DNA of 64,000 nt, taken from contig NC_047072.1 in the NCBI RefSeq assembly GCF_902459465.1, positions 16,120,001 to 16,184,000 on the forward strand, read 5' to 3'. The notes below the pieces were generated by a model. The model made no database searches. It worked only from the letters and a program-made list of their open reading frames with translations, and was not told the origin of the DNA. This document shows, one piece after another, positions 3,701-63,197 of this stretch. Position 1 is the first letter of the stretch. Every line of letters starts with the position of its first letter. Position numbers and translations under genes: made by a program. This stretch comes from Asterias rubens (Eukaryota).

Positions 3701-6700
3701 AGTTTGTTCCAATCAATGGCCCAGCTACTAACAGCTTCCCTAATGTCAGTAGGAAGATTGTTCCAATCAATGGCCCAGCTACTAACAGCTTCCCTAATGG
3801 CAGTAGGAAGATTGTTCCAATCAATGGCCCAGCTACTAACAGCTTCCCTAATGTCAGTAGGAAGATTGTTCCAATCAATGGCCCAGCTACTAACAGCTTC
3901 CCTAATGGCAGTAGGAAGATTGTTCCAATCAATGGCCCAGCTACTAACAGCTTCCCTAATGTCAGTAGGAAGATTGTTCCAATCAATGGCCCAGCTACTA
4001 ACAGCTTCCCTAATGTCAGTAGGAAGATTGTTCCAATCAATGGCCCAGCTACTAACAGCTTCCCTAATGTCAGTAGGAAGATTGTTCCAATCAATGGCCC
4101 AGCTACTAACAGCTTCCCTAATGGCAGTAGGAAGATTGTTCCAATCAATGGCCCAGCTACTAACAGCTTCCCTAATGTCAGTAGGAAGATTGTTCCAATC
4201 AATGGCCCAGCTACTAACAGCTTCCCTAATGGCAGTAGGAAGATTGTTCCAATCAATGGCCCAGCTACTAACAGCTTCCCTAATGGCAGTAGGAAGATTG
4301 TTCCAATCAATGGCCCAGCTAGTAACAGCTTCCCTAATGGCAGTAGGAAGATTGTTCAAATCATTGGCCCAGCTACTAACAGCTTCCCTAATGGCAGTAG
4401 GAAGATTGTTCCAATCAATGGCCAAGCTACTAACAGCTTCCCTAATGGCAGTAGGAAGATTGTTCAAATCATTGGCCCAGCTACTAACAGCTTCCCTAAT
4501 GGCAGTAGGAAGATTGTTCCAATCAATGGCCCAGCTACTAACAGCTTTCCTAATGGCAGTAGGAAGATTGTTCAAATCAATGGCCCAGCTACTAACAGCT
4601 TCCCTAATGGCAGTAGGAAGATTGTTCAAATCAATGGCCCAGCTACTAACAGCTTCCCTAATGGCAGTAGGAAGATTGTTCAAATCATTGGCCCAGCTAC
4701 TAACAGCTTCCCTAATGGCAGTAGGAAGATTGTTCCAATCAATGGCCCAGCTACTAACAGCTTCCCTAATGGCAGTAGGAAGATTGTTCCAATCAATGGC
4801 CCAGCTACTAACAGCTTCCCTAATGGCAGTAGGAAGATTGTTCCAATCAATGGCCCAGCTACTAACAGCTTCCCTAATGGCAGTAGGAAGATTGTTCCAA
4901 TCAATGGCCCAGCTACTAACAGCTTCCCTAATGGCAGTAGGAAGATTGTTCCAATCAATGGCCCAGCTACTAACAGCTTCCCTAATGGCAGTAGGAAGAT
5001 TGTTCCAATCAATGGCCCAGCTACTAACAGCTTCCCTAATGGCAGTAGGAAGATTGTTCCAATCAATGGCCCAGCTACTAACAGCTTCCCTAATGGCAGT
5101 AGGAAGATTGTTCCAATCAATGGCCCAGCTACTAACAGCTTCCCTAATGGCAGTAGGAAGATTGTTCCAATCAATGGCCCAGCTACTAACAGCTTCCCTA
5201 ATGGCAGTAGGAAGATTGTTCCAATCAATGGCCCAGCTACTAACAGCTTCCCTAATGGCAGTAGGAAGATTGTTCCAATCAATGGCCCAGCTACTAACAG
5301 CTTCCCCAATGGCAGTAGGAAGATTGTTCCAATCAATGGCCCAGCTACTAACAGCTTCCCTAATGTCAGTATGAAGATTGTTCAAATCATTGGCCCAGCT
5401 ACTAACAGCTTCCCTAATGGCAGTAGGAAGATTGTTCCAATCAATGGCCCAGCTACTAACAGCTTCCCTAATGTCAGTAGGAAGATTGTTCCAATCAATG
5501 GCCCAGCTACTAACAGCTTCCCTAATGGCAGTAGGAAGATTGTTCCAATCATTGGCCCAGCTACTAACAGCTTCCCTAATGGCAGTAGGAAGATTGTTCC
5601 AATCAATGGCCCAGCTACTAACAGCTTCCCTAATGGCAGTAGGAAGATTGTTCCAATCAATGGCCCAGCTACTAACAGCTTCCCTAATGGCAGTAGGAAG
5701 ATTGTTCCAATCAATGGCCCAGCTACTAACAGCTTCCCTAATGTCAGTAGGAAGATTGTTCAAATCATTGGCCCAGCTACTAACAGCTTCCCTAATGGCA
5801 GTAGGAAGATTGTTCCAATCAATGGCCCAGCTACATTGTACAATGAAAGCTATTTGACTTACATTTAGAACTTTGTTTGCTCTTGGTTACATTCAAGCGT
5901 GTGATTTCGATCGAAGAACACGTGGAGGATTGTAATGTGACAGTAAAGTGAAAATATAGAGTGCTAATTTTGTCTCTGATTAGTTGCAATGAAAGGAACA
6001 AAGATTCATCAAGTCAACATTTGTACCAGTATATTCTGAATATCTTCAGAAGAAAGCCACTTTGTATCTTACCATATTTTGGATAATTCAGCTGTTGGGA
6101 GTTTAGACTTTTCAAAGAATTCTTTAGAATCAGCACCTGTAAGTAAAACAAGTCCAACTTCCATTATCAGTAATAATCAATAATAATAATAGCTTCACAG
6201 ACTGGGAATAATGGCCATACAAACTTACTTAGTGAGAAGTACTGCAGCTATTTTAAGAAATGATTCCTTTAAAGTTATGATGGTTTGGATAATTCTCTTA
6301 CACGTAGTTAGAGTAGCGATTGTCCAAGTGTAGATGCATACAAACTGTCAAAGAACAACAACTCTTTTTGAGTAGTGGTCGAGTCCTAATGGGAGACTTT
6401 CTGGGACGATAGAGGGCAGCAGACTTACCGGGTAAATCCATTGTTCTCAGAATTATGCGCATGTTCAGAACTACGTAAACAATGGAAATTTACCCGGTAT
6501 GTCTGCTGCCGCCTAGCGTTGGAAAGTCTCCTATTGGTCCCTCTCCGAGCTGTGACTACTCAAAAGAGATCTATTGACCCTAATACTATAACGGGGCTCG
6601 AAATTAACACTGGACCGCAAGCTTGGGACCAGTGATTAAAGCATCAAGCCAGGAAACTAATAATAGGACAAGCCCATACTTCATTATGAAATATCTTTGT

Positions 6701-17919: not shown

Positions 17920-18193
17920 TTTACCCAACCTCACCACCCTTGATGTTGTCCTTTGTGTTTCCATCTTCTTGCTTGTGGTCAAGCCATTCCCTTCTCTTCA
18001 CCCCCCCCTTTTTGTCCCCCTATTCATTGTTTATCCCCCTGCTTTTTATGTACGCTTTCTAACCCCATTCATGTATTTCCACTTCACTGCTTATGTTTCA
18101 CTTAGTTACCTGTCCACGTTTGTTGTGTTGTCATTTAGCCTTCGAGAAAGACTCTGCTAGGGTCGAAACGTCAGGCCATTAACTATTTTTTGC
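17920..18193 (+). mobile_element. Second Penelope-like terminal repeat family (gccttcgagaaagactctgctagggtcgaaacgtcaggcc)
   Basis: HHR-like architecture at 18138-18176; degenerate relatives at ~2975-3100 and ~7760-7880. Confidence 0.55.
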
Positions 18194-20093
18194 AATAATG
18201 TATTTACAATAATGTTGGTGTTAAATAAAGTGACAAGGCATGGGAAAATAAGGCGAACTGGTTTGCCTAGATACAACTCAGAGGAAGGACCAAGTATTGT
18301 GAGCGCTGACCTCTACAAATGCAGTATGCCAATAAAAAACAATCCATTTTGGGTAACCGGGGTGCGTGTGAGGCAACCCCAAATCATTAGTAGGTCAGAG
18401 TATTTCTACTGAATAAAGAGTGGCAGGAAAACAATATTCAGTCTTAAAATGATTCACGGTTTGGAATTGGCTGCGGTTGGCTGCGGTTGGAATGATTGAT
18501 TTAGGTCAAAAAAAAATTCTCAAGCGCTGAACACAAATAGATTTCAAGGAGATACCAAAAGGGCCGACAGCGATGGCCAAACTGGTGCAGTGCGCACTAC
18601 AATAAACGTTTTTATGCATTATGCATGCATGGTTGTTTGGCATAAAGTTCAGAGACGGGAATCTAACCCTACAATGGAGTTTCTGAAGGTTTTGATCAGT
18701 TTGAAATAGTTCGTCAGACAGAATCCAGGGACCTGGCCCTTGGTTGGTGATTGATTTGTTAAAGTGGATCAAAAGCCTCCTAAAGCCCCTTAGCACGATT
18801 GATTAACAACAGTGTCTGCTTCAGGGTCTGTATAGACGATGGTATCAAAATTGAAGCATTTTGATTGGCTTATTATTTTAAATAAATCTGTTCACGTGCC
18901 CAAACTATTCACGCCTTTCCCCCCGCGGACCAATAGCGATGGTTTTCAGTCCTAAATGTTTTCTATAAAACAAGACCGACACAGGCTGGTTTGACGAAAG
19001 CAGAGTCACCACTTACAGAGAGTAGCAGCACATTTAAATCTGCCATATCGAGAGACGGTATTTCACCAGGGAGAAACTTCCATTATAAAGGTATGTTTGT
19101 TATATTCATTTATAATGATCTCATCTGTATCATATATTATTGTGTAATTTTAGTTTCAGATCAGAGTATACTGATCGAAACGTCGAGTTAAAACCAACGG
19201 TTCTTTTCAGAACCACCCAACTAGAGATTATCTTTGCATGGTGTTACCGCAAACTTCATATTGTATTTCCACCATGCAAAGTTTAACATCCATCTTAAAT
19301 TTAGTTTGTTGGTTGTTTAAGAAAAGACACAAAGAAGGGAAATAGCTCAGTGGTGTAGATGGCAGTTGTAATGTTATGAAATGCTCTTCCTTCGATTGCT
19401 GAACCTCTTTCTCACATCTTTAACCTCTACTTTTTGAGTGGATCTGTGCCTCTTGTTGCAAAAACATTTCCTAATATGATATATTATTTTTTCTTCTTCC
19501 CAAAACTTCATCAAAGAATAATGTGTAATCGTTTCACTAGTTTCATTTCTCATTGCATGCTTTAGATTTACTCTGTACCGACTTGGCCCAAATTGAATTT
19601 TGCCTCTTATCCTTACATAAATCACTGCAATAATCTGATGGGCATCTTTAAGGAATACCATATTGCAACCTCCAACTGACTGTATGGTTTTTATAATAAT
19701 GAAGCAACTGCAAGTTGCATCATCAATTACTGCAATTCGAGCTCATTTTGTTTTTGCTGTCAAAACTGTTGCTGGCAGTTAAGGCACTTTATGTAATCCA
19801 CCATAATTACATAAACTGACAAACCTGTAGAGGTTTTATATCGATCTAATCGGCCATCTGGGTCACGAGAAAATAGTGAAAACAAAATAAATGCCACCTT
19901 TTGCAAAACATCGATTAAAGAGAATTGAATAAAACGCTCACTGAGCGATAAACGGGAAATTTGCTTTACTTGATTCCCATATAATGACATTTCAAAGCAC
20001 GTTTTTTACTTTAGTATCACCATCATTAGACCGTGTAAGTTTTATGTGAATCTGTGATCGATTTGTACGTTCAGACGTGGGGTTAAACTAAAA

Positions 20094-20626
20094 AGCCATT
20101 ATACACTTTCGGTAAACAGTATTGTCCAAGTCCCACACTTCGTGTATCACAACTTATATATAAAATAACAAACCTGTGAAAATTTAGGCTCAATCGGTCA
20201 TCGGAGTCGGGAGAAAATAACGGGAAAATCCACTCTTGTTTCCGCGCGTTCCGCACTTATCTTATGTCACAGGTTTTCTGACTAATTTTGTTGTGTCTGA
20301 TTTTCTTTGTGTTGTGTTTTGTTTTGTTTTTGATTTGTTTTTGGTTTTACTGCGCCTTGAACACCCAGCAAGGTGGATATGTGCGCATTACAAGGTTTAT
20401 TATTATTATTTATTATTATTATGTCATGACGTGTGTTTAGAATAAATCCGTAATTCTCGCTATCGAGAATTGATATTGTTTTAATGTTTTCTCAATAAGT
20501 AAAGAATTTCATGGAACAATATTTCAAGAGAAGTCTTTCACCATTACCTTTTGTAAACCCTGTAAATTATTTTTCTAACTCTATGAACTTTTTTCTTTCT
20601 TTCTGTACCAAAAGTGTATAATGGCT
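20094..20626. mobile_element. Non-autonomous TIR element (Kolobok-like) interrupted by a LINE/SINE tail
   Basis: TIRs agccattatacactt(tc)ggta / tacc(aa)aagtgtataatggct, with TTAA on the right flank. Internal tgcgccttgaacaccc...gcgcattacaag plus (tta)n at ~20350-20420. Confidence 0.6.
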
Positions 20627-21128
20627 TTAAGAGAGCATGCAGCACCGATATTTGCACAGTTTTATAACCTCACTGTCGCGTTTTTTGGTGTAGACTCCAT
20701 ACCGGGAAAATCATGTTTATTAAAACAAACTTCCTCCAACAGTCAACTCTTCCTTGTTCACGTTTGTTCAAGAGCTCGTTTAATTGTTTGTTTTTCTTCT
20801 TTGATAAAATTTCAGTGACAGAAAATGATGGAATTGTTACCTGAAGAGGGGACCGATCTCGCCATGGTAGTAATCACATTGTTCAGGAATCATCCGTTCT
20901 GTTGTATACGCTTTTGATCGATTGAGGTTATACGGCTCTAAAGGGAACATTACATTTATAATTGTTTGGTTTCGTTTCAGATGATTTACAAGTTGATGCT
21001 GATTTTGATCGTGGTGTCCACCGCAGATGCATTTATTCTAACTGCACTTTTAACTGCGCTTTTGATCGATTGAGGTTATACGGCTCTAAAGGGAACATTA
21101 CATTTATAATTGTTTGGTTTCGTTTCAG

Positions 21129-22696
21129 ATGATTTACAAGTTGATGCTGATTTTGATCGTGGTGTCCACCGCAGATGCATTTATTCTAACTGCACTTACG
21201 GGTGCCGGTATAATACAACCAGAACCTCTAGCAAATTGTCCGGACATGTTTACAAAGAGTATGAAAGGTAAACAAAAAGTTATGTTGACAAACGTTGAGT
21301 AAGAAAATAATTAATTGAACTAGTTTGTGTTTGCCAAGCTTCACAAGAATGACGGTGACACAGTCCCCCACGCACTTTGCATCAATACTAAGATCTCTCA
21401 TGCACACCCTCTCTTGTCCGAGTGTTTGCCAAGCTTCACAAGAATGACGGTGACACAGTCCCCCACGCACTTTGGATCAATACTAAGATCTCTCATGCAC
21501 ACCCCCTCTCTTGTCCGAGTGGTGTCGGTTTCACTCTTGTCAGAGTGAAAGTCAGTTTGTGTCACTCTGTTTGGGTGAAATAAGGAACGATCTTCACTCG
21601 AGTTCAAAGACCCGGCTTTCACCCTTAAGAGAGTTGTCCACTCTTTCTCTCTTAATGTACGACTATTATACTAGAACACATTAAATACAATGTCCCATTC
21701 GGTAGGGCTTAAACCATTTTTCGAAGAACACTAACAATTTTGTTGCATCGAACTTTTGGAGATCAGATTTCAACAAAAAGAAAAATATACTTGTATGTAT
21801 TGTCAGGGTTCAGCATTAATGGAATCGCCCAAGCGCCACTGGATCGGCCTCGCGAAAAGGGCACTGATAAAAAAGGCGGCCTTTTCAGTTCAAAACAACA
21901 ATCGGAATTCTGACTTTTTAATGCCAGCTCAACACCCATTTTTTGCATTGTCTCCTGTTTCTGTGTCCTTGTTATTTAAAGGCAGTGGACACTATTGGTA
22001 ATTGTCAAAGACTAGCCTTCAAAGTTGGTGTATCTCAACATATGCATAACATAACAAACCTGTGAAAATATGAGCTTGGTCGGTCATCGAACTTGCGAGA
22101 AAATACTGAAAGAAAAAAAACCCTTGTCACACGAAGTTGTGTGCGTTTAGATGGTTGATTTCGAGACCTCAAGTTCTAAACTTGAGGTCTTGAAATCAAA
22201 TTCGTGGAAAATTACTTCGTTCTCGAATACTATGTCACTTCAGAGGGAGCCGTTTCTCACAATGTTTTATACCATCAACCTCTCCCCATTACTCGTCACC
22301 AAAAAAGGTTTTGTGCTAATAATTATTTTGAGAAATTACCAATAGTGTCCACTGCCTTTAAGATGCTTGTTTTCATCCGCAGGACGTGGTATTTGTCTGA
22401 CTACAGAACAGTTTTGGGGTGAGACTGAACGGGATGCGGCCCAAGCCAAATGTAAGACTATGGATGCGGAGCTTTGTGACTTGGGCATGTTGTCTTATGC
22501 GTGGCAGCAGAACTACGCTGATGAACGCTGGGGCATGTACGACGTGCCAGGTCGGGACGCTAGAGTTACTCCCTGTGGCAAAAACTACTCTGGTGACGAA
22601 TGTTATACCTATAAAATGCTCATTATTGCTCCCATTCACGTCATCCCGAACACTCCCCGCCCTAGTCCTAAGCTACCCGCTTGGTGCTGTAAATAG
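21129..22696 (+). CDS. Small secreted Cys-rich protein (~150 aa) with a Link-module/C-type-lectin-fold-like domain
   Basis: Exon 21129-21267 (acceptor tttcgtttcag; MIYKLMLILIVVSTADA signal-peptide-like; phase-1 donor G|gtaaac) joins in frame to exon 22383-22696 (acceptor ttttcatccgcag; AAQAKCKTMDAELCDLGMLSYAWQQNY...PCG...AWCCK*). Eight Cys in total. An upstream exon may exist (candidate 20816-20866). AATAAA at ~23188. The fold assignment is by-eye pattern matching only. Confidence 0.75.
21980..22357. mobile_element. Non-autonomous Kolobok-like MITE (TTAA target duplication, TIR AGGCAGTGGACACTATTGGTAATT)
   Basis: Perfect TIRs with TTAA at 21976-21979 and 22358-22361. Repeated in each array unit, with an inverted dispersed copy at ~46070-46446. 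A related subfamily (aggcactggacac...gtgtccagtgtct) lies at ~23271-23550. Confidence 0.82.
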
Positions 22697-25600
22697 ACAA
22701 ACATAGTAAACAACAACAAAAACAAACATTGTTCGGTTCGGTTGTCAGGATACATATTTTGTTTATCCCTTTTCGTTTTTCCATTAACCCTGTCAAGATT
22801 TAAGTGGACTACCTAGATAATAGACTACCTGACAGCAGCGTAACCATGGCGTAACTAAGGTGTATTTTTTTTGGGGGGGGGGGGGTGCACACATTCTTCT
22901 AGGGGGGCCCTTCAGAACATTTGACCCGATAAAATATATCGGGCTTTAGATATCTCTAATACGACTTTAATTTTAGGACGGTTATTAAACATAAAGGAAT
23001 TTATTGATTTATAATTATGAACAATCAATGTTCAGTTAATTTGTTAACAATACCATATTAATTATCGCTTGTCAATTTAAAAACTGATGATTATTCTAAC
23101 TACATCTTTTTTTACTACGCTTTAATTCTTTCCTTTTGCCATTTTTACATATATAGTTTGAGTGTATTTTTGTATAAGAGAAGCTTGAATAAAATTCCTC
23201 CTCCAGGGTAAAAACAAAATTTGGATTCTTGTCCAACATCCCCTAACTAGTTATTACCCTTGTGGCTTAAAGGCACTGGACACCTTTGGTAATAATTGTC
23301 GAAGACTAACATGTAGTATTCCAATTTGGGTGTATCCCAAACAATCTGTGAGCATTTGGACTCAATGGTCATCGAAGTTGCACGAGAGCAATGAAAGAAA
23401 AGAAAAAGACTCTTGTCACCGGGTTTTCGGCTTTCAGATGCTTGAATTCGAGACAATATTTTACATAATATTAATCAACAGCTCTCCATTGCTCGTTACC
23501 AAGTAAGTTTGTATGCTACAACTATTTTGAGTAATTAGTGTCCAGTGTCTTTAAAGTGATTAGCATTTATAGGATAAATGAAATATAAAAAAGGCACAAA
23601 AAACTTTCAAAATGGCAAAACGAGAATTGAAAGTAAGGTGAAATGGGACACAAAAAATGTGAAACTCTAAGGATTGCATTAAAATGTACATTTCATGGAC
23701 CCTGAATTCTTGCGAAGCCATGCCTGGTGAAAAATGGGGGGGGGGGGGGGGGGGGGGGTAGTGCTTTCTGCTGTACCAGCCAGGCTTCTGACGGACTGTA
23801 TAGCCGTATGGACTGTAAAGGGGTTGCCCGTTTCAGCCCCAGGAGTAGGTGGCAACGGCCCCTGGAAAACAGTTAATTGTAGCCCACACCTTGAAGTGGC
23901 CTTCAGGCCTTGTGTGTCTGGCTACTTGAACAAAATAAAATAAATAAATAGATAAATAAAAGCTATTGATGTAAAAGGGTATTACTTCATATCCAACACT
24001 GGATGCATCAGAGTGATATGCCAATTGAACGACTTGGGCTAATGTCTTTATTGATACAGTGTTTAGAAAACAAAACCGAATGATTTACAATGACACAAAT
24101 ACAAACTAAGTACCAACAACATTTTGTATTATTCAGTTTATTTATTTCTTCAATATACAACTGTTTGATGTCAGCTAATTTCAAGTCTTTATTAAACAAG
24201 AGAATAAATGAAAACAATAAAACTCCAACGCATTGGTATATCATGATAAGCCTCAAGTAATATTCTTGAAATTTTAAATTCCTTGTAATCCATGTTTAAA
24301 ACTTCAAGGTTGGGATAACTTTCTTTTATTCATGCATAAGTATTGTGGGAAAGAAATGTCCTATTATTTAACTATAAAATTAACAAAATTGAGAGAGAAA
24401 GAAGCAATTTTTACCTCATTCTTAAATTCTGTAAAACTTTGATCAGTTTAAAAATATAGCTGTCTTGAAAGAAACATTTATTTCAAAAGATAATAGTCTA
24501 ATTTATAACCGATTAAAAAACATAAAAGTTTACACTAAAAGTAAGACTTTCTTAAATACAAAGCATTTTCTTAGATTTCTGAGATTTATATCAGCAATCA
24601 CAGATAAAGAATACTTCCGCCCATGTTAAGTGTCACATGAGCAGTTATAGATGCACACCAACTCTTAACATGAGTGAACATGGGTGGACCATGGGCGTGT
24701 CTGTTCCATGTAGCATTCCTGATGACGCAAATCACTATTCTTACAATGCAACAGCTTTTAATGGCTTGAAAGCATACAATATGTCCTCTCGAACGGAAGG
24801 CCTATCCCCTACAGCCTTTAAAGTGATTCCCAGAACACAACGCAGACACTGGGGGTACACAAGGCCACGTATCGAACACCAATTAAAATGGCTTTATAGG
24901 TTCCTATCAAATCTAAAAAAGCAATGTAAGATTCGTTTATAGTATCGGCTATTTCAGAACAACAACGAGAAATAAATGTCTATGAAGAAGCTTTCAGTCT
25001 ACTTGTCGAAACTTATTTAACGTCAATTGTGTTTTTGGTACTAAGATAGTTCAATGGTGGGTATTGTGATAAGTTAAGACCAACAAGTTTCTAATGATTT
25101 TGAAGACGGGGTTGCACATTGTTATTACCGTACTATTCAAATAGTGTACCAATAATGTATTTACAATAATGTTGGTGTTAAATAAAGTGACAAGGCATGT
25201 GAAAATAAGGCGAACTGGTTTGCCTAGATACAACTCAGAGGAAGGACCAAGTATTGTGAGCGCTGACCTCTACAAAATGCAGTATGCCAATAAAAAAAAA
25301 ATCCATTTTGGGTAACCGGAGCGCGTGTGAGGCAACCCCAAATCATTAGTAGGTCAGAGTATTTCTACTGAATAAAGAGTGGCAGGAAAACAATATTCAG
25401 TCTTAAAATGTTTTGATTCACGGTTTGGAATTGGCTACGGTTGGAATGATTGATTTAGGTCAAAAAAAAAATTCTCAAGCGCTGAACACAAAATGTATTT
25501 CAAGGAGATACCAAAAGGGCCGACAGCGATGGCCAAACTGGTGCAGTGCGCACTACAATAAACGTTTTTATGCATTATGCATGCATGGTTGATTGGCATA

Positions 25601-26633
25601 AAGTTCAGAGACGGGAATCTAACCCTACAATGGAGTTTCTGAAGGTTTTGATCAGTTTGAAATAGTTCGTCAGACAGAATCCAGGGACCTGGCCCTTGGT
25701 TGGTGATTGATTTGTTAAAGTGGATCAAAAGCCTCCTAAAGCCCCTTAGCACGATTGATTAACAACAGTGTCTGCTTCAGGGTCTCTATAGACGATGGTA
25801 TCAAAATTGAAGCATTTTGATTGGCTTATTATTTTAAATAAATCTGTTCACGTGCCCAAACTATTCACGCCTTTTCCTCCGCGGACCAATAGCGATGGTT
25901 TTCGGTCCTAAATGCCATATCGAGAACACATTAAATACAATGTCCCATTCGGTAGGGCTTAAACCATTTTTCGAAGAACACTAACAATTTTGTTGCATCG
26001 AACTTTTGGAGATCAGATTTCAACAAAAAGAAAAATATACTTGTATGTATTGTCAGGGTTCAGCATTGATGGAATCGCCCAAGCGCCACTGGATCGGCCT
26101 CGCGAAAAGGGCACTGATAAAAAAGGCGGCCTTTTCAGTTCAAAACAACAATCGGAATTCTGACTTTTTAACGCCAGCTCAACACCCATTTTTTGCATTG
26201 TCTCCTGTTTCTGTGTCCTTGTTATTTAAAGGCAGTGGACACTATTGGTAATTGTCAAAGACTAGCCTTCACAGTTGGTGTATCTCAACATATGCATAAC
26301 ATAACAAACCTGTGAAAATATGAGCTTGGTCGGTCATCGAACTTGCGAGAAAATACTGAAAGAAAAAAAACCCCTTGTCACACGAAGTTGTGTGCGTTTA
26401 GATGGTTGATTTCGAGACCTCAAGTTCTAAACTTGAGGTCTTGAAATCAAATTCGTGGAAAATTACTTCGTTCTCGAATACTATGTCACTTCAGAGGGAG
26501 CCGTTTCTCACAATGTTTTATACCATCAACCTCTCCCCATTACTCGTCACCAAAAAAGGTTTTGTGCTAAAAATTATTTTGAGAAATTACCAATAGTGTC
26601 CACTGCCTTTAAGATGCTTGTTTTCATCCGCAG

Positions 26634-26947
26634 GACGTGGTATTTGTCTGACTACAGAACGGTTTTGGGGTGAGACTGAACGGGATGCGGCCCAAGCCAA
26701 ATGTAAGACTATGGATGCGGAGCTTTGTGACTTGGGCATGTTGTCTTATGCGTGGCAGCAGAACTACGCTGATGGACGCTGGGGCATGTACGACGTGCCA
26801 GGTCGGGACGCTAGAGTTACTCCCTGTGGCAAAAACTACTCTGGTGACGAATGTTATACCTATAGAATGCTCATTATTGCTCCCATTCACGTCATCCCGA
26901 ACACTCCCCGCCCTAGTCCTAAGCTACCCGCTTGGTGCTGTAAATAG
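26634..26947 (+). pseudogene. Orphan copy 2 of the Link-like terminal exon (Q>R, E>G, K>R relative to copy 1)
   Basis: Near-identical to 22383-22696, with intact AG acceptor, frame and stop. No signal-peptide exon in its repeat unit. It could be a pseudo-exon or an alternative last exon. Confidence 0.7.
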
Positions 26948-29900
26948 ACAAACATAGTAAACAACAACAAAAACAAACATTGTTCGGTTCGGTTGTCAGG
27001 ATACATATTTTGTTTATCCCTTTTCGTTTTTCCATTAACCCTGTCAAGATTTAAGTGGACTACCTAGATAATAGACTACCTGACAGCAGCGTAACCATGG
27101 CGTAACTAAGGTGTATTTTTAGGGGGGGGGGTGCACACATTCTTCTAGGGGGGCCCTTCAGAACATTTGACCCGATAAAATATATCGGGCTTTAGATATC
27201 TCTAATACGACTTTAATTTTAGGACGGTTATTAAACATAAAGGAATTTATTGATTTATAATTATGAACAATCAATGTTCAGTTAATTTGTTAACAATACC
27301 ATATTAATTATCGCTTGTCAATTTAAAAACTGATGATTATTCTAACTACATCTTTTTTTACTACGCTTTTATTCTTTCCTTTTGCCATTTTTACAAATAT
27401 AGTTTAAGTGTATTTTTGTATAAGAGAAGCTTGAATAAAATTCCTCCTCCAGGGTAAAAACAAAATTTTGAATTCGAGACAATGTTTTACATGATATTAA
27501 TCAACAGCTCTCCATTGCTCGTTACCAAGTAAGTTTGTATGCTACAACTATTTTGAGTAATTAGTGTCCAGTGTCTTTAAAGTGATTAGCATTTATAGGA
27601 TAAATGAATATAAAAAAGGCACAAAAAACCTTCAAAATGGCAAAACGAAAATTGAAAGTAAGGTGAAATGGGACACAAAAAATGTGAAACTCTAAGGATT
27701 GCATTAAAATGTACATTTCATGGACCCTGAATTCTTGCGAAGCCATGCCTGGTGAAAAATGGGGGGGGGGGAGGGGGTAGTGCTTTCTGCTGTACCAGCC
27801 AGGCTTCTGACGGACTGTATAGCCGTATGGACTGTAAAGGGGTTGCCCGTTTCAGCCCCAGGAGTAGGTGGCAACGGCCCCTGGAAAACAGTTAATTGTA
27901 GCCCACACCTTGAAGTGGCCTTCAGGCCTTGTGTGTCTGGCTACTTGAACAAAATAAAATAAATAAATAGATAAATAAAAGCTATTGATGTAAAAGGGTA
28001 TTACTTCATATCCAACACTGGATGCATCAGAGTGATATGCCAATTGAACGACTTGGGCTAATGTCTTTATTGATACAGTGTTTAGAAAACAAAACCGAAT
28101 GATTTACAATGACACAAATACAAACTAAGTACCAACAACATTTTGTATTATTCAGTTTATTTATTTCTTCAATATACAACTGTTTGATGTCAGCTAATTT
28201 CAAGTCTTTATTAAACAAGAGAATAAATGAAAACAATAAAACTCCAACGCATTGGTATATCATGATAAGCCTCAAGTAATATTCTTGAAATTTTAAATTC
28301 CTTGTAATCCATGTTTAAAACTTCAAGGTTGGGATAACTTTCTTTTATTCATGCATAAGTATTGTGGGAAAGAAATGTCCTATTATTTAACTATAAAATT
28401 AACAAAATTGAGAGAGAAAGAAGCAATTTTTACCTCATTCTTAAATTCTGTAAAACTTTGATCAGTTTAAAAATATAGCTGTCTTGAAAGAAACATTTAT
28501 TTTAAAAGATAATAGTCTAATTTATAACCGATTAAAAAACATAAAAGTTTACACTAAAAGTAAGACTTTCTTAAATACAAAGCATTTTCTTAGATTTCTG
28601 AGCTTTATATCAGCAATCACAGATATAGAATACTTCCGCCCATGTTAAGTGTCACATGAGCAGTTATAGATGCACACCAACTCTTAACATGAGTGGACAT
28701 GGGTGGACCATGGGCGTGTCTGTTCCATGTAGCATTCCTGATGACGCAAATCACTATTCTTACAATGCAACAGCTTTTAATGGCTTGAAATCATACAATA
28801 TGTCCTCTCGAACGGAAGGCCTATCCCCTACAGCCTTTAAAGTGATTCCCAGAACACAACGCAGACACTGGGGGTACACAAGGCCACGTATCGAACACCA
28901 ATTAAAATGGCTTTATAGGTTCCTATCAAATCTAAAAAAGCAATGTAAGATTCGTTTATAGTATCGGCTATTTCAGAACAACAACGAGAAATAAATGTCT
29001 ATGAAGAAGCTTTCAGTCTACTTGTCGAAACTTATTTAACGTCAATTGTGTTTTTGGTACTAAGATAGTTCAATGGTGGGTATTGTGATAAGTTAAAGAC
29101 CAACAAGTTTCTAATGATTTTGAAGACGGGGTTGCACATTGTTATTACCGTACTATTCAAATAGTGTACCAATAATGTATTTACAATAATGTTGGTGTTA
29201 AATAAAGTGACAAGGCATGTGAAAATAAGGCGAACTGGTTTGCCTAGATACAACTCAGAGGAAGGACCAAGTATTGTGAGCACTGACCTCTACAAATGCA
29301 GTATGCCAATAAAAAAAAATCCATTTTGGGTAACCGGAGCGCGTGTGAGGCAACCCCAAATCATTAGTAGGTCAGAGTATTTCTACTGAATAAAGAGTGG
29401 CAGGAAAACAATATTCAGTCTTAAAATGTTTTGATTCACGGTTTGGAATTGGCTGCGGTTGGCTACGGTTGGAATGATTGATTTAGGTCAAAAAAAAAAT
29501 TCTCAAGCGCTGAACACAAAATGTATTTCAAGGAGATACCAAAAGGGCCGACAGCGATGGCCAAACTGGTGCAGTGCGCACTACAATAAACGTTTTTATG
29601 CATTATGCATGCATGGTTGATTGGCATAAAGTTCAGAGACGGGAATCTAACCCTACAATGGAGTTTCTGAAGGTTTTGATCAGTTTGAAATAGTTCGTCA
29701 GACAGAATCCAGGGACCTGGCCCTTGGTTGGTGATTGATTTGTTAAAGTGGATCAAAAGCCTCCTAAAGCCCCTTAGCACGATTGATTAACAACAGTGTC
29801 TGCTTCAGGGTCTCTATAGACGATGGTATCAAAATTGAAGCATTTTGATTGGCTTATTATTTTAAATAAATCTGTTCACGTGCCCAAACTATTCACGCCT

Positions 29901-30661
29901 TTTCCTCCGCGGACCAATAGCGATGGTTTTCGGTCCTAAATGCCATATCGAGAACCCATTAAATACAATGTCCCATTCGGTAGGGCTTAAACCATTTTTC
30001 GAAGAACACTAACAATTTTGTTGCATCGAACTTTTGGAGATCAGATTTCAACAAAAAGAAAAATATACTTGTATGTATTGTCAGGGTTCAGCATTAATGG
30101 AATCGCCCAAGCGCCACTGGATCGGCCTCGCGAAAAGGGCACTGATAAAAAAGGCGGCCTTTTCAGTTCAAAACAACAATCGGAATTCTGACTTTTTAAC
30201 GCCAGCTCAACACCCATTTTTTGCATTGTCTCCTGTTTCTGTGTCCTTGTTATTTAAAGGCAGTGGACACTATTGGTAATTGTCAAAGACTAGCCTTCAC
30301 AGTTGGTGTATCTCAACATATGCATAACATAACAAACCTGTGAAAATATGAGCTTGGTCGGTCATCGAACTTGCGAGAAAATACTGAAAGAAAAAAAAAC
30401 CCTTGTCACACGAAGTTGTGTGCGTTTAGATGGTTGATTTCGAGACCTCAAGTTCTAAACTTGAGGTCTTGAAATCAAATTCGTGGAAAATTACTTCGTT
30501 CTCGAATACTATGTCACTTCAGAGGGAGCCGTTTCTCACAATGTTTTATACCATCAACCTCTCCCCATTACTCGTCACCAAAAAAGGTTTTGTGCTAAAA
30601 ATTATTTTGAGAAATTACCAATAGTGTCCACTGCCTTTAAGATGCTTGTTTTCATCCGCAG

Positions 30662-30981
30662 GACGTGGTATTTGTCTGACTACAGAACGGTTTTGGGGTG
30701 AGACTGAACGGGATGCGGCCCAAGCCAAATGTAAGACTATGGATGCGGAGCTTTGTGACTTGGGCATGTTGTCTTACTCTTATGCGTGGCAGCAGAACTA
30801 CGCTGATGAACGCTGGGGCATGTACGACGTGCCAGGTCGGGACGCTAGAGTTACTCCCTGTGGCAAAAACTACTCTGGTGACGAATGTTATACCTATAAA
30901 ATGCTCATTATTGCTCCCATTCACGTCATCCCGAACACTCCCCGCCCTAGTCCTAAGCTACCCGCTTGGTGCTGTAAATAG
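30662..30981 (+). pseudogene. Orphan copy 3 of the Link-like terminal exon (Q>R plus in-frame Ser-Tyr duplication)
   Basis: Same exon with a 6-nt insertion (tcttac), giving LSYSYAW. Acceptor and stop intact. Confidence 0.7.
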
Positions 30982-33900
30982 ACAAACATAGTAAACAACA
31001 ACAAAAACAAACATTGTTCGGTTCGGTTGTCAGGATACATATTTTGTTTATCCCTTTTCGTTTTTCCATTAACCCTGTCAAGATTTAAGTGGACTACCTA
31101 GATAATAGACTACCTGACAGCAGCGTAACCATGGCGTAACTAAGGTGTATTTTTAGGGGGGGGGGGTGCACACATTCTTCTAGGGGGGCCCTTCAGAACA
31201 TTTGACCCGATAAAATATATCGGGCTTTAGATATCTCTAATACGACTTTAATTTTAGGACGGTTATTAAACATAAAGGAATTTATTGATTTATAATTATG
31301 AACAATCAATGTTCAGTTAATTTGTTAACAATACCATATTAATTATCGCTTGTCAATTTAATAACTGATGATTATTCTAATTACATCTTTTTTTACTACG
31401 CTTTAATTCTTTCCTTTTGCCGTTTTTACATATATAGTTTGAGTGTATTTTTGTATAAGAGAAGCTTGAATAAAATTCCTCCTCCAGGGTAAAAACAAAA
31501 TTTGGATTCTTGTCCAACATCCCCTACTTAGTTATTACCCTTGTGGCTTAAAGGCACTGGACACCTTTGGTAATAATTGTCGAAGACTAACATGTAGTAT
31601 TCCAATTTGGGTGTATCCCAAACAATCTGTGAGCATTTGGACTCAATGGTCATCGAAGTTGCACGAGAGCAATGAAAGAAAAGAAAAAGACTCTTGTCAC
31701 CGGGTTTTCGGCTTTCAGATGCTTGAATTCGAGACAATGTTTTACATAATATTAATCAACAGCTCTCCATTGCTCGTTACCAAGTAAGTTTGTATGCTAC
31801 AACTATTTTGAGTAATTAGTGTCCAGTGTCTTTAAAGTGATTAGCATTTATAGGATAAATGAATATAAAAAAGGCACAAAAAACCTTCAAATAGGCAAAA
31901 CGAAAATTGAAAGTAAGGTGAAATGGGACACAAAAAATGTGAAACTCTAATGATTGCATTAAAATGTACATTTCATGGACCCTGAATTCTTGCGAAGCCA
32001 TGCCTGGTGAAAAATGGGGGGGGGGGGAGGGGGTAGTGCTTTCTGCTGTACCAGCCAGGCTTCTGACGGACTGTATAGCCGTATGGACTGTAAAGAGGTT
32101 GCCCGTTTCAGCCCCAGGAGTAGGTGGCAACGGCCCCTGGAAAACAGTTAATTGTAGCCCACACCTTGAAGTGGCCTTCAGGCCTTGTGTGTCTGGCTAC
32201 TTGAACAAAATAAATAAATAGATAAATAAAAGCTATTGATGTAAAAGGGTATTACTTCAAATCCAACACTGGATGCATCAGAGTGATATGCCAATTGAAC
32301 GACTTGGGCTAATGTCTTTATTGATACAGTGTTTAGAAAACAAAACCGAATGATTTACAATGACACAAATACAAACTAAGTACCAACAACATTTTGTATT
32401 ATTCAGTTTATTTATTTCTTCAATATACAACTGTTTGATGTCAGCTAATTTCAAGTCTTTATTAAACAAGAGAATAAATGAAAACAATTAAACTCCAACG
32501 CATTGGTATATCATGATAGGCCTCAAGTAATATTCTTGAAATTTTAAATTCCTTGTAATCCATGTTTAAAACTTCAAGGTTGGGATAACTTTCTTTTATT
32601 CATGCATAAGTATTGTGGGAAAGAAATGTCCTATTATTTAACTATAAAATTAACAAAATTGAGAGAGAAAGAAGCAATTTTTACCTCATTCTTAAATTCT
32701 GTAAAACTTTGATCAGTTTAAAAATATAGCTGTCTTGAAAGAAACATTTATTTTAAAAGATAATAGTCTAATTTATAACCGATTAAAAAACATAAAAGTT
32801 TACACTAAAAGTAAGACTTTCTTAAATACAAAGCATTTTCTTAGATTTCTGAGATTTATATCAGCAATCACAGATATAGAATACTTCCGCCCATGTTAAG
32901 TGTCACATGAGCAGTTATAGATGCACACCAACTCTTAACATGAGTGGACATGGGTGGACCATGGGCGTGTCTGTTCCATGTAGCATTCCTGATGACGCAA
33001 ATCACTATTCTTACAATGCAACAGCTTTTAATGGCTTGAAAGCATACAATATGTCCTCTCGAACGGAAGGCCTATCCCCTACAGCCTTTAAAGTGATTCC
33101 CAGAACACAACGCAGACACTGGGGGTACACAAGGCCACGTATCGAACACCAATTAAAATGGCTTTATAGGTTCCTATCAAATCTAAAAAAGCAATGTAAG
33201 ATTCGTTTATAGTATCGGCTATTTCAGAACAACAACGAGAAATAAATGTCTATGAAGAAGCTTTCAGTCTACTTGTCGAAACTTATTTAACGTCAATTGT
33301 GTTTTTGGTACTAAGATAGTTCAATGGTGGGTATTGTGATAAGTTAAAGACCAACAAGTTTCTAATGATTTTGAAGACGGGGTTGCACATTGTTATTACC
33401 GTACTATTCAAATAGTGTACCAATAATGTATTTACAATAATGTTGGTGTTAAATAAAGTGACAAGGCATGTGAAAATAAGGCGAACTGGTTTGCCTAGAT
33501 ACAACTCAGAGGAAGGACCAAGTATTGTGAGCGCTGACCTCTACAAATGCAGTATGCCAATAAAAAAATATCCATTTTGGGTAACCGGAGCGCGTGTGAG
33601 GCAACCCCAAATCATTAGTAGGTCAGAGTATTTCTACTGAATAAAGAGTGGCAGGAAAACAATATTCAGTCTTAAAATGTTTTGATTCACGGTTTAGAAT
33701 TGGCTACGGTTGGAATGATTGATTTAGGTCAAAAAAAAAATTCTCAAGCGCTGAACACAAAATGTATTTCAAGGAGATACCAAAAGGGCCGACAGCGATG
33801 GCCAAACTGGTGCAGTGCGCACTACAATAAACGTTTTCATGCATTATGCATGCATGGTTGATTGGCATAAAGTTCAGAGACGGGAATCTAACCCTACAAT

Positions 33901-34902
33901 GGAGTTTCTGAAGGTTTTGATCAGTTTGAAATAGTTCGTCAGAGAGAATCCAGGGGACCTGGCCCTTGGTTGGTGATTGATTTGTTAAAGTGGATCAAAA
34001 GCCTCCTAAAGCCCCTTAGCACGATTGATTAACAACAGTGTCTGCTTCAGGGTCTCTATAGACGATGGTATCAAAATTGAAGCATTTTGATTGGCTTATT
34101 ATTTTAAATAAATCTGTTCACGTGCCCAAACTATTCACGCTTTTCCTCCGCGGACCAATAGCGATGGTTTTCGGTCCTAAATGCCATATCGAGAACACAT
34201 TAAATACAATGTCCTATTCGGTAGGGCTTAAACCATTTTTCGAAGAACACTAACAATTTTGTTGCATCGAACTTTTGGAGATCAGATTTCAACAAAAAGA
34301 AAAATATACTTGTATGTATTGTCAGGGTTCAGCATTAATGGAATCGCCCAAGCGCCACTGGATCGGCCTCGCGAAAAGGGCACTGATAAAAAAGGCGGCC
34401 TTTTCAGTTCAAAACAACAATCGGAATTCTGACTTTTTAACGCCAGCTCAACACCCATTTTTTGCATTGTCTCCTGTTTCTGTGTCCTTGTTATTTAAAG
34501 GCAGTGGACACTATTGGTAATTGTCAAAGACTAGCCTTCACAGTTGGTGTATCTCAACATATGCATAACATAACAAACCTGTGAAAATATGAGCTTGGTC
34601 GGTCATCGAACTTGCGAGAAAATACTGATAGAAAAAAAACCCCTTGTCACACGAAGTTGTGTGCGTTTAGATGGTTGATTTCGAGACCTCAAGTTCTAAA
34701 CTTGAGGTCTTGAAATCAAATTCGTGGAAAATTACTTCGTTCTCGAATACTATGTCACTTCAGAGGGAGCCGTTTCTCACAATGTTTTATACCATCAACC
34801 TCTCCCCATTACTCGTCACCAAAAAAGGTTTTGTGCTAAAAATTATTTTGAGAAATTACCAATAGTGTCCACTGCCTTTAAGATGCTTGTTTTCATCCGC
34901 AG

Positions 34903-35216
34903 GACGTGGTATTTGTCTGACTACAGAACGGTTTTGGGGTGAGACTGAACGGGATGCGGCCCAAGCCAAATGTAAGACTATGGATGCGGAGCTTTGTGAC
35001 TTGGGCATGTTGTCTTATGCGTGGCAGCAGAACTACGCTGATGGACGCTGGGGCATGTACGACGTGCCAGGTCGGGACGCTAGAGTTACTCCCTGTGGCA
35101 AAAACTACTCTGGTGACGAATGTTATACCTATAGAATGCTCATTATTGCTCCCATTCACGTCATCCCGAACACTCCCCGCCCTAGTCCTAAGCTACCCGC
35201 TTGGTGCTGTAAATAG
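34903..35216 (+). pseudogene. Orphan copy 4 of the Link-like terminal exon (same protein variant as copy 2)
   Basis: Intact acceptor, frame and stop; carries the R/G/R variants seen in copy 2. Confidence 0.7.
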
Positions 35217-37195
35217 ACAAACATAGTAAACAACAACAAAAACAAACATTGTTCGGTTCGGTTGTCAGGATACATATTTTGTTTATCCCTTTTCGTTTTT
35301 CCATTAACCCTGTCAAGATTTAAGTGGACTACCTAGATAATAGACTACCTGACAGCAGCGTAACCATGGCGTAACTAAGGTGTATTTTTAGGGGGGGGGG
35401 TGCACACATTCTTCTAGGGGGGCCCTTCAGAACATTTGACCCGATAAAATATATCGGGCTTTAGATATCTCTAATACGACTTTAATTTTAGGACGGTTAT
35501 TAAACATAAAGGAATTTATTGATTTATAATTATGAACAATCAATGTTCAGTTAATTTGTTAACAATACCATATTAATTATCGCTTGTCAATTTAATAACT
35601 GATGATTATTCTAATTACATCTTTTTTTTACTACGCTTTAATTCTTTCCTTTTGCCGTTTTTACATATATAGTTTGAGTGTATTTTTGTATAAGAGAAGC
35701 TTGAATAAAATTCCTCCTCCAGGGTAAAAACAAAATTTGGATTCTTGTCCAACATCCCCTAACTATAGTTATTACCCTTGTGGCTTAAAGGCACTGGACA
35801 CCTTTGGTAATAATTGTCGAAGACTAACATGTAGTATTCCAATTTGGGTGTATCCCAAACAATCTGTGAGCATTTGGACTCAATGGTCATCGAAGTTGCA
35901 CGAGAGCAATGAAAGAAAAGAAAAAGACTCTTGTCACCGGGTTTTCGGCTTTCAGATGCTTGAATTCGAGACAATGTTTTACATAATATTAATCAACAGC
36001 TCTCCATTGCTCGTTACCAAGTAAGTTTGTATGCTACAACTATTTTGAGTAATTAGTGTCCAGTGTCTTTAAAGTGATTAGCATTTATAGGATAAATGAA
36101 TATAAAAAAGGCACAAAAAACCTTCAAAATGGCAAAACGAGAATTGAAAGTAAGGTGAAATGGGACACAAAAAATGTGAAACTCTAAGGATTGCATTAAA
36201 ATGTACATTTCATGGACCCTGAATTCTTGCGAAGCCATGCCTGGTGAAAAATGGGGGGGGGGGGGGGGGGGGGGGGGTAGTGCTTTCTGCTGTACCAGCC
36301 AGGCTTCTGACGGACTGTATAGCCGTATGGACTGTAAAGGGGTTGCCCGTTTCAGCCCCAGGAGTAGGTGGCAACGGCCCCTGGAAAACAGTTAATTGTA
36401 GCCCACACCTTGAAGTGGCCTTCAGGCCTTGTGTGTCTGGCTACTTGAACAAAATAAAATAAATAAATAGATAAATAAAAGCTATTGATGTAAAAGGGTA
36501 TTACTTCACATCCAACACTGGATGCATCAGAGTGATATGCCAATTGAACGACTTGGGCTAATGTCTTTATTGATACAGTGTTTAGAAAACAAAACCGAAT
36601 GATTTACAATGACACAAATACAAACTAAGTACCAACAACATTTTGTATTATTCAGTTTATTTATTTCTTCAATATACAACTGTTTGATGTCAGCTAATTT
36701 CAAGTCTTTATTAAACAAGAGAATAAATGAAAACAATAAAACTCCAACGCATTGGTATATCATGATAAGCCTCAAGTAATATTCTTGAAATTTTAAATTC
36801 CTTGTAATCCATGTTTAAAACTTCAAGGTTGGGATAACTTTCTTTTATTCATGCATAAGTATTGTGGGAAAGAAATGTCCTATTATTTAACTATAAAATT
36901 AACAAAATTGAGAGAGAAAGAAGCAATTTTTACCTCATTCTTAAATTCTGTAAAACTTTGATCAGTTTAAAAATATAGCTGTCTTGAAAGAAACATTTAT
37001 TTTAAAAGATAATAGTCTAATTTATAACCGATTAAAAAACATAAAAGTTTACACTAAAAGTAAGACTTTCTTAAATACAAAGCATTTTCTTAGATTTCTG
37101 AGATTTATATCAGCAATCACAGATAAAGAATACTTCCGCCCATGTTAAGTGTCACATGAGCAGTTATAGATGCACACCAACTCTTAACATGAGTG

Positions 37196-37312
37196 GACAT
37201 GGGTGGACCATGGGCGGACCATGGGCTGACCATGGGCTGACCATGGGCTGACCATGGGCTGACCATGGGCTGACCATGGGTGGACCATGGGTGGACCACT
37301 GGCTGACCATGT
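37196..37312. repeat. ~11-bp repeat (ccatgggctga) in the MAP3K7 3'UTR, coinciding with the array breakpoint
   Basis: About 9-10 imperfect copies beginning ~70 bp after the MAP3K7 stop codon. Confidence 0.85.
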
Positions 37313-37379
37313 GAGCACCAGTAGCAGTATGTGAAGTCAGGCAAAGGGTTGTTTGGAGTTGATCTCAATCATCAATTGG

Positions 37380-54827
<17,448 letters not shown>

Positions 54828-56553: not shown

Positions 56554-63197
<6,644 letters not shown>

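What the first reader, a model, noticed from the sequence alone, without database searches (positions are those of the whole stretch)
21129..37215. One signal-peptide exon followed by four variant terminal exons: a possible alternative-last-exon array for a secreted lectin-fold protein
Seen in sequence: the leader exon (21129-21267) occurs once. The exon encoding the whole Cys-rich domain occurs four times (22383, 26634, 30662, 34903), each with the same phase-1 AG acceptor, an open frame, a stop and its own downstream AATAAA. The copies encode three protein variants: Q/E/K; R/G/R; and R/E/K plus a Ser-Tyr insertion. Inference: splicing the single leader to any copy would give an in-frame secreted protein, a compact diversification architecture next to the innate-immune kinase TAK1. 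At ~99% identity, intact frames are not evidence of selection, so copies 2-4 may be dead duplicates or an assembly expansion.
Basis: partly seen in the sequence, partly recalled or inferred. Interest (0 to 1): 0.75.

Follow-up and report, generated by a model that had tools for sequence, protein, structure and literature searches.

The report
Recent tandem copies of last exon
A small secreted Link-module-like protein gene of a starfish has had its last exon and neighbouring DNA copied head to tail about 3.7 times very recently, but every assembled transcript examined uses only the first copy, so this looks like an ordinary young partial gene duplication and not a diversity-generating exon array.

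Summary
A 4.25-kb unit is repeated 3.7 times head to tail (21673-37216). Units differ by 0.54-0.69% substitutions. Each carries the whole domain-coding last exon with an identical acceptor, an open frame and a stop.

The array is not an assembly artefact. Independent marine metagenome contigs span a unit-to-unit junction and reproduce unit 2's 220-bp deletion.

The protein (150 aa: signal peptide, then an 8-Cys domain) belongs to an uncharacterised, mostly marine family. Its high-confidence model matches Link modules (TSG-6, aggrecan G1, LYVE-1).

The alternative-last-exon reading is not supported. In four RNA data sets from three studies, the spliced contigs join 21267 to 22383. They carry copy-1 letters at every diagnostic site they cover; no copy 2-4 letter appears.

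Variation in the exon copies is no different from that in flanking non-coding DNA. All three ways of splitting the four units into pairs occur, which indicates exchange between units.

The unit also contains the distal ~0.8 kb of the 3'UTR of the convergent neighbour, read as TAK1. That gene uses the last copy.

Earlier notes of this scan describe similar young partial tandem duplications elsewhere in this genome.

Verdict: young, probably neutral partial duplication. Low interest.

The parts
18193..18958 (.). Segment A: upstream sequence whose copy (95.5% identical) forms the tail of each full repeat unit
   Evidence: BLAST of unit 3 against the window: 33421-34183 matches 18193-18958. Alignment of A with the unit tails.
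20910..21057 (+). Partial tandem duplicate of the leader's 5' half (acceptor, ATG, first ~69 coding nt), without a splice donor
   Evidence: Read directly. RNA contigs start their leader piece at the downstream acceptor, 21127/21129.
21129..21267 (+). Leader coding exon: ATG, signal peptide and a conserved Cys-Pro motif. Single copy, outside the repeat. Preceded by an AG acceptor, so a 5'UTR exon lies further upstream.
   Evidence: Translation. Spliced contigs in X3, X4 and X8. The Cys-Pro motif is shared with P0004, P0013 and P0037.
21673..25922 (.). Repeat unit 1 (part of the intron, last exon, 3'UTR, copy of the distal neighbour-gene 3'UTR, 452-bp segment X at 24698-25149, copy of A)
22383..22696 (+). 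Copy 1 of the domain-coding last exon (Q/E/K), coding part. This is the copy found in all transcript contigs. The 3'UTR continues to at least 23295.
   Evidence: zero other letters in the coding exon in four runs, and A at 22410 is unique to unit 1.
25923..29950 (.). Repeat unit 2 (lacks about 220 bp of a SINE-like element)
   Evidence: Metagenome contig L003 reproduces the deletion.
26634..26947 (+). Copy 2 of the last exon (R/G/R); no transcript evidence
29951..34191 (.). Repeat unit 3
30662..30981 (+). Copy 3 of the last exon (R/E/K with a 6-nt Ser-Tyr insertion inside helix 2 of the domain); no transcript evidence
34192..37216 (.). Repeat unit 4, partial; ends at the original right-hand flank
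34903..35216 (+). Copy 4 of the last exon (R/G/R); no transcript evidence
36412..37379 (-). 3'UTR of the convergent neighbour (read as TAK1). It overlaps the end of unit 4, and its distal ~0.8 kb is part of every unit.
   Evidence: RNA contigs in X4, X8 and X5 cover 23893-24697 (unit-1 numbering). The X4 contig has three other letters, equal to the three unit-4 differences in that span; X8 and X5 have two each. They run 24-30 nt past 24697, which is the unit-4 boundary 37216. Their depth does not follow that of the Link-like mRNA. Strand is inferred.
37217..37300 (.). 12-bp microsatellite (GACCATGGGCTG)n at the right breakpoint of the array
37380..37478 (-). Last coding exon of the neighbour gene (32 codons plus stop, AG acceptor)
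   Evidence: Translation. Identification as the TAK1 C-terminus rests on my recollection of the human TAK1 C-terminal sequence. Pfam gives nothing.

Best explanation
This is a very young partial tandem duplication, most likely a copy-number variant.

The ancestral locus held a two-coding-exon gene for a small secreted Link-module-like protein (+ strand). It converged on the 3' end of the neighbouring kinase gene, read as TAK1 (- strand). A 4.25-kb unit was amplified to 3.7 copies by unequal exchange. The unit consists of the 3' part of the intron, the last exon with its 3'UTR, the distal part of the neighbour's 3'UTR, 452 bp of filler, and a copy of an upstream segment.

The promoter, the 5'UTR exon and the signal-peptide exon were not copied. 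Copies 2-4 could therefore only be expressed by splicing from the single donor at 21267. In practice the donor pairs with the first acceptor it meets, and the transcript is then processed at downstream 3' ends. Only copy 1 is represented in mRNA.

Symmetrically, the convergent neighbour runs into the array from the other side and uses the last unit. The inner copies evolve neutrally and exchange sequence with each other.

Shown: the array, its independent confirmation, the splice junction, copy-1 alleles in the transcript contigs, the Link-like fold. Inferred: the order of events, first-come-first-served splicing as the reason, the silence (as opposed to rarity) of copies 2-4, and the strand of the second transcript.
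For: Array anatomy.

Independent DNA: contig L001 spans a unit tail into the next unit's exon (27812-31090, 99.4%). L003 equals unit 2 including its deletion and starts exactly at the unit boundary.

Transcripts: contigs in X3 (1164 nt, depth 244), X4 (1075 nt, depth 300) and X8 (703 nt, depth 9) join 21127-21265 to 22381-23295 (22381-22857 in X8). This is the same join as 21267|22383 because of a 2-nt ambiguity. There are no other letters at 22410, 22524 or 22614 and no 6-nt insertion. The X3 and X4 contigs also show copy-1 letters at the 3'UTR sites 23081-23160. X5 has a matching exon contig. A at 22410 is unique to unit 1.

No selection signal: 3 of 314 exon sites vary against 30 of 2474 non-coding sites (Fisher p = 1). 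All three exon substitutions are non-synonymous, and there is one in-frame indel.

Exchange between units: the bipartitions 12|34, 13|24 and 14|23 each occur at three sites. The recombinant exon haplotypes R/G/K (P0001) and Q+SY/E/K (P0002) occur in wild DNA.

Other notes of this scan report similar young partial duplications in the same genome (unchecked).
Against: The RNA evidence is from assembled contigs, which collapse minority variants. A minor share of transcripts ending in copies 2-4 cannot be excluded; I would not trust the data below roughly a third.

Only four runs were laid, and their tissues and conditions are unknown.

In X3, unit-1-type RNA continues to about 25297, so transcription can pass several AATAAA motifs.

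All four frames are intact, and the acceptors are identical.

Copy number in other individuals was not measured.
Confidence: 0.75

Rival explanations
1. A working alternative-last-exon array. The single leader is spliced to any of the four terminal exons, giving three slightly different secreted proteins, perhaps in particular cells or after immune challenge.
For: Four identical acceptors, open frames, stops and poly(A) signals. In X3, RNA of unit-1 type extends about 2.6 kb past the stop, so read-through occurs. Another note of this scan reports a gene in this genome with swappable terminal exons (unchecked).
Against: No contig in four runs carries a copy 2-4 letter in the exon. With equal use, G at 22410 would be the majority letter. 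The variants differ by three residues and one 2-residue insertion in a conserved helix, at the neutral rate. Units differ by only 0.5-0.7%, too young for intact frames to mean anything.
Confidence: 0.1
2. Assembly expansion. The individual has fewer units (one or two), and the assembler over-counted a repeat.
For: Copy number was not verified by read depth here. The long homopolymer run in unit 1 (22870-22875) disagrees by 5 letters with the X3 and X4 RNA contigs, so local assembly errors exist.
Against: A unit-to-unit junction, the unit-2 deletion and the Ser-Tyr insertion all occur in independent metagenome assemblies. The units carry distinct private substitutions and indels. At least two units in tandem are certain.
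Confidence: 0.1
3. Copies 2-4 are expressed from their own start sites in the duplicated upstream segment (the unit tails), giving leaderless transcripts.
For: RNA contigs with the letters of segment A cover 25150-25900 in X4 and X5, so A-type sequence is transcribed.
Against: Those contigs carry the letters of the original A (18193-18958), not of the unit tails. Their depth does not follow the mRNA: 0 in X3, where the mRNA depth is 244. No contig joins a tail to an exon copy. A leaderless product would lack the signal peptide and the conserved N-terminal Cys.
Confidence: 0.03

Closest known systems
Link module (Pfam Xlink PF00193; TSG-6, CD44, LYVE-1, aggrecan G1, HAPLN, stabilin-2), part of the C-type-lectin-like superfamily
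   Same: About 100 residues with the order strand, helix, helix, then five strands. The best structural matches are all Link modules (TM 0.55-0.68, probability 1.0). The family profile hits aggrecan G1 (E = 2e-4) and CD44. Some relatives pass the Pfam Xlink threshold.
   Different: This protein scores 15.5 bits against a threshold of 27. The family has its own signature: six conserved Cys within the domain, an IPNTPRP motif and a C-terminal Cys-Cys. Hyaluronan binding is untested. The family members found are unnamed or 'uncharacterized'.
Alternative 3' terminal exon arrays (Drosophila lola and mod(mdg4); alternative last exons in general). From my own knowledge, not tested here.
   Same: One common 5' part followed by several terminal exons, each with an acceptor, a stop and poly(A) signals.
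   Different: Those arrays have old, diverged exons coding distinct domains, and each isoform is documented. Here the copies are over 99% identical including non-coding DNA, and only the first is seen in transcripts.
Young partial tandem gene duplications / copy-number variants, including those other notes of this scan report in the same genome (GST 5' cassettes; NRDE2 terminal exon x4)
   Same: Head-to-tail units of a few kb with near identity in coding and non-coding DNA alike. Only part of a gene is copied. Only the copy in the normal position is used.
   Different: Here the unit straddles the 3' ends of two convergent genes, so each gene uses the unit nearest its own promoter.

Membership tests
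Link module (Pfam Xlink PF00193) | Score at or above Pfam's gathering threshold (27 bits) | tested here: not met
   15.5 bits, E = 0.021 for copy 1; nothing for copy 3. Relatives P0007 (34.4) and P0006 (27.4) pass. 8 of 21 aligned members match at E <= 0.01.
Link module (Pfam Xlink PF00193) | Link/CTLD-type alpha-beta fold | tested here: met
   AlphaFold2 model with pLDDT 90.9 and pTM 0.82. Foldseek top hits are TSG-6 2pf5, aggrecan G1 9dft/9dff and LYVE-1 8os2, and stabilin-2, HAPLN1/2 and aggrecan, at TM 0.55-0.68.
Link module (Pfam Xlink PF00193) | Two conserved disulfides (C1-C4, C2-C3) | not testable with these tools
   Conserved Cys lie in helix 1 (C23), at C31, C64 and C73, and at the C-terminal pair C101/C102.
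Link module (Pfam Xlink PF00193) | Binding of hyaluronan or another glycosaminoglycan | not testable with these tools
Alternative-last-exon array | Several terminal exons, each with acceptor, open frame, stop and poly(A) signal behind one shared donor | tested here: met
Alternative-last-exon array | Transcripts that join the shared exon to each terminal exon | tested here: not met
   Four runs from three studies show only copy-1 letters in the spliced contigs. Contig-level data are blind to minor isoforms.
Alternative-last-exon array | Variant exons maintained or diversified by selection | tested here: not met
   Exon variation is 3/314 against 30/2474 in non-coding DNA, p = 1. The Ser-Tyr insertion falls in a helix that has no 2-residue insertion in any of 20 relatives.
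Young partial tandem duplication / copy-number variant | Head-to-tail units nearly identical in coding and non-coding DNA alike | tested here: met
   0.54-0.69% substitutions over 2.8-4.2 kb.
Young partial tandem duplication / copy-number variant | Junction between units present in independent DNA | tested here: met
   L001 (ENA metagenome contig) spans 27812-31090 at 99.4%.
Young partial tandem duplication / copy-number variant | Copy number varies between individuals | not tested
No DNA depth was obtained.

The most novel reading that the evidence does not exclude
The downstream copies are used at a low level or only in certain cells or conditions. The array would then be an alternative-last-exon system caught at birth: four identical acceptors competing for one donor, with protein variants already segregating and recombining in the population. 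A side reading is that the amplified block, which holds the 3' ends of two convergent genes, acts as a buffer of spare terminators between them.
Probability: 0.1. Interest if true: 0.45.

Novelty: new member of a known kind. Interest (0 to 1): 0.2.

Why it matters
As it stands, this is a routine structural variant. It is useful mainly as a caution that intact, repeated terminal exons in this genome need not be alternative exons.

Two modest points of value remain.
(1) The gene appears to be missing from the protein collections searched. It belongs to an uncharacterised family of divergent Link-like domains (IPNTPRP...CC signature). Some relatives carry the domain several times or beside a PAN domain. 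Link modules are best known as hyaluronan binders in vertebrates, so this family could be worth a biochemical look in echinoderms.
(2) The block straddles the 3' ends of two convergent genes, and each gene uses the copy nearest its promoter. This is a tidy natural illustration of first-come-first-served RNA processing.

Tried and rejected
- Word-based protein search with the exon found only the gene's own variants, P0001 and P0002, from metagenome DNA. No full-length 150-aa product is on record.
- Two exact-pattern scans of JGI metagenome contigs, one for the spliced junction and one for an exon core, found nothing.
- The contigs carrying the 56%-identical relative P0003 are too short to show its locus. 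The contig carrying P0002 could not be fetched.
- Pfam found nothing in the two conserved ORFs inside the unit (24637-24939 +, 25438-25752 -), so the unit does not look like a coding transposon. Pfam also found nothing in the two neighbour-gene exon pieces.
- Two paper searches gave nothing specific.
- I considered that segment A might hold the gene's 5'UTR exon, which would give each unit a promoter. I rejected this because the depth of A-type RNA does not follow the mRNA depth.
- I considered that the RNA contig at 23893-24697 was read-through from the Link-like gene. For X4, X8 and X5 I rejected this because of their other-letter counts (X4 equals unit 4 exactly), their continuation past the unit-4 boundary, and their uncorrelated depth.
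Full report
**1. What is in the sequence**

A self-comparison of 20000-39000 against the window shows one head-to-tail array from 21673 to 37216.
- Unit 1: 21673-25922.
- Unit 2: 25923-29950, lacking about 220 bp of a SINE-like element.
- Unit 3: 29951-34191.
- Unit 4: 34192-37216, partial, stopping after the first 3025 bp of the unit.

Units differ by 0.54-0.69% substitutions plus a few indels.

Each unit carries the same exon, at 22383, 26634, 30662 and 34903. The 20 nt before each AG are identical. Each exon is in frame with the 139-nt leader exon (21129-21267, phase 1), has a stop, and has ATTAAA and AATAAA motifs about 290 and 490 nt further on.

The leader lies outside the repeat. Three details were missed.
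- The leader's 5' half, with its acceptor and ATG, is itself duplicated in tandem at about 20910-21057, without a donor.
- An AG acceptor sits directly before the ATG, so a 5'UTR exon must lie upstream.
- The last ~770 bp of each full unit is a 95.5% copy of 18193-18958, upstream of the leader.

**2. How the array is built**

Call the upstream segment A, the leader region B (18959-21672), the exon-bearing segment C (21673-24697) and the right flank D (37217 onward). The locus then reads A-B-C-X-A'-C-X-A'-C-X-A'-C-D. X is 452 bp found nowhere else in the window (24698-25149).

The right breakpoint lies at the edge of a 12-bp microsatellite. Eight extra letters sit at each A'-to-C joint.

The simplest history is a duplication of A-B-C with filler X, loss of B from the new copy, and then amplification of C-X-A' by unequal exchange. 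This order of events is inference.

All three possible pairings of the four units (12|34, 13|24, 14|23) are each supported by three sites. No single tree can produce this, so the units exchange sequence.

**3. Is it an assembly artefact?**

No. The only close protein match in 5.8 billion sequences is P0001, from three ENA marine metagenome contigs.
- L001 runs from a unit tail into the next unit's exon (27812-31090, 99.4%).
- L003 equals unit 2 including its deletion, and begins exactly at the unit boundary.

P0001 is R/G/K. Its cluster mate P0002 is Q with the Ser-Tyr insertion, then E/K. Neither haplotype is in this assembly, so the variant sites recombine in the wild.

The exact copy number in this animal was not checked.

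**4. The protein**

The leader codes a plausible signal peptide followed by a Cys-Pro motif. The last exon codes 103 residues with seven Cys.

Sequence evidence:
- Pfam gives only a sub-threshold Xlink match (15.5 bits against 27).
- An exhaustive HMMER search of 1.84 billion representatives finds 33 relatives at E <= 0.001. Some carry several stretches matching this domain, and one has a PAN domain beside it.
- The alignment shows conserved Cys, a WG motif, GRDA, IPNTPRP and a terminal Cys-Cys.
- Two relatives pass the Xlink threshold.
- The family profile hits aggrecan G1 (E = 2e-4), CD44 and LYVE-1.

Structural evidence:
- AlphaFold2 with this alignment gives pLDDT 90.9 and pTM 0.82.
- All top structural matches are Link modules: TSG-6, aggrecan G1, LYVE-1, stabilin-2 and HAPLN, at TM 0.55-0.68.

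The only named relative is an 'uncharacterized protein' of Asterias amurensis (P0037). Its gene has the same two-exon plan, with the intron at the same place five residues before the first strand. Earlier notes of this scan name the genome as Asterias rubens. I did not verify that beyond this congener match.

**5. Which copies are expressed**

Anything from units 2-4 therefore had to pile onto unit 1 and show as other letters.

The four runs (X3, X4, X8, X5; three studies) proved to be RNA, because they contain spliced contigs:
- X3: 1164 nt, depth 244.
- X4: 1075 nt, depth 300.
- X8: 703 nt, depth 9.

Each contig joins 21127-21265 to 22381 onward. A 2-nt ambiguity makes this the same join as 21267|22383. 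X5 has a matching exon contig.

No run shows any other letter between 22383 and 22696, or the 6-nt insertion. A at 22410 is private to unit 1. The X3 and X4 contigs, which reach 23293-23295, also carry unit-1 letters at the 3'UTR sites 23081-23160.

If the four acceptors were used equally, G would be the majority letter at 22410. So copy 1 dominates in every run. Contigs hide minority variants, so rare use of copies 2-4 is not excluded.

The X3 and X4 contigs pass the AATAAA at 23188 and break at a SINE-like repeat near 23295. In X3, RNA of unit-1 type (C at 24484, A at 24677) continues to about 25297 and then drops to zero. The 3' end is therefore not settled, and it may differ between samples.

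**6. Selection**

Three of 314 exon sites vary among the copies, against 30 of 2474 non-coding sites (Fisher p = 1). All three exon changes are non-synonymous, which is unremarkable for three changes. The Ser-Tyr insertion sits in helix 2, where none of 20 relatives has a two-residue insertion. Nothing here suggests constraint or diversifying selection.

**7. A second gene shares the block**

In X4, X8 and X5 a separate contig covers 23893-24697 (unit-1 numbering). The X4 contig has three other letters, equal to the three unit-4 differences in that span (23990, 24484, 24677). The X8 and X5 contigs have two each. The contigs run 24-30 nt past 24697, which is the unit-4 boundary at 37216; I take those extra letters to be the flank's microsatellite, though they were not shown.

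The depth of this contig does not follow the Link-like mRNA (319 against 27 in X5; 49 against 9 in X8).

Just beyond, on the minus strand, lies a short terminal coding exon (37380-37478) with an AG acceptor and a stop. Its product resembles the C-terminal coiled coil of human TAK1 as I recall it. The kinase exons lie further right on the same strand.

I therefore read this RNA as the neighbour's 3'UTR. Its distal ~0.8 kb belongs to the repeat unit. The neighbour uses the last unit, and the Link-like gene uses the first.

**8. Verdict**

This is a real, very young, probably neutral partial tandem duplication at the meeting point of two convergent genes. The alternative-last-exon idea is unsupported at the resolution available. 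The protein is a new member of a divergent Link-like family.

Similar partial tandem duplications were noted elsewhere in this genome by this scan.

Noticed in passing
window 36412-37478 (- strand): The neighbour gene's last coding exon (37380-37478) and its 3'UTR run into repeat unit 4. About 0.8 kb of that 3'UTR is therefore present four times. RNA contigs whose other-letter counts fit unit 4 cross the array boundary.
   Followed up: partly
window 20910-21057: A 148-bp tandem duplicate of the leader's acceptor, ATG and first 23 codons. If its acceptor were used, it would give a 30-codon upstream ORF ending in a stop. The RNA contigs use the downstream acceptor.
   Followed up: partly
window 23489-23679 joined to 24714-25781 (run X4, depth 35): One RNA contig skips 23680-24713 without GT-AG ends. 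It joins segment X to a tail that carries the letters of the upstream segment A. This may be a structurally different unit in that animal. Unexplained.
   Followed up: no
window about 18167-19190: Segment A and the sequence after it are transcribed in X4 and X5 (depth 35-39) but not in X3 or X8, independently of the Link-like mRNA. Gene and strand unknown.
   Followed up: no
window 21974-22362, 23250-23545 and 46064-46451: SINE-like elements with very high word depth in all RNA runs (up to millions). They break the transcript contigs. Unit 2 lacks about 220 bp of the one in the 3'UTR.
   Followed up: no
window 37734-38315: A 10-bp microsatellite of about 58 copies, just right of the array, in an intron or flank of the neighbour gene.
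   Followed up: no
window 3427-5868, 44218-45615, 59942-60523: Three large minisatellites that give long spurious ORFs in several frames.
   Followed up: no
window 22870-22875: The long G run in unit 1's 3'UTR is 5 letters longer than in the X3 and X4 RNA contigs, and 4-5 letters longer than in units 2-4. This is a possible homopolymer assembly error or a polymorphism.
   Followed up: no
proteins P0005, P0006, P0007, P0010 (relatives, not in the window): The same Link-like domain occurs in several matched stretches (nine in P0005). P0010 has a PAN domain, and P0005 has PKD/Ig-like matches, in otherwise unnamed proteins.
   Followed up: partly
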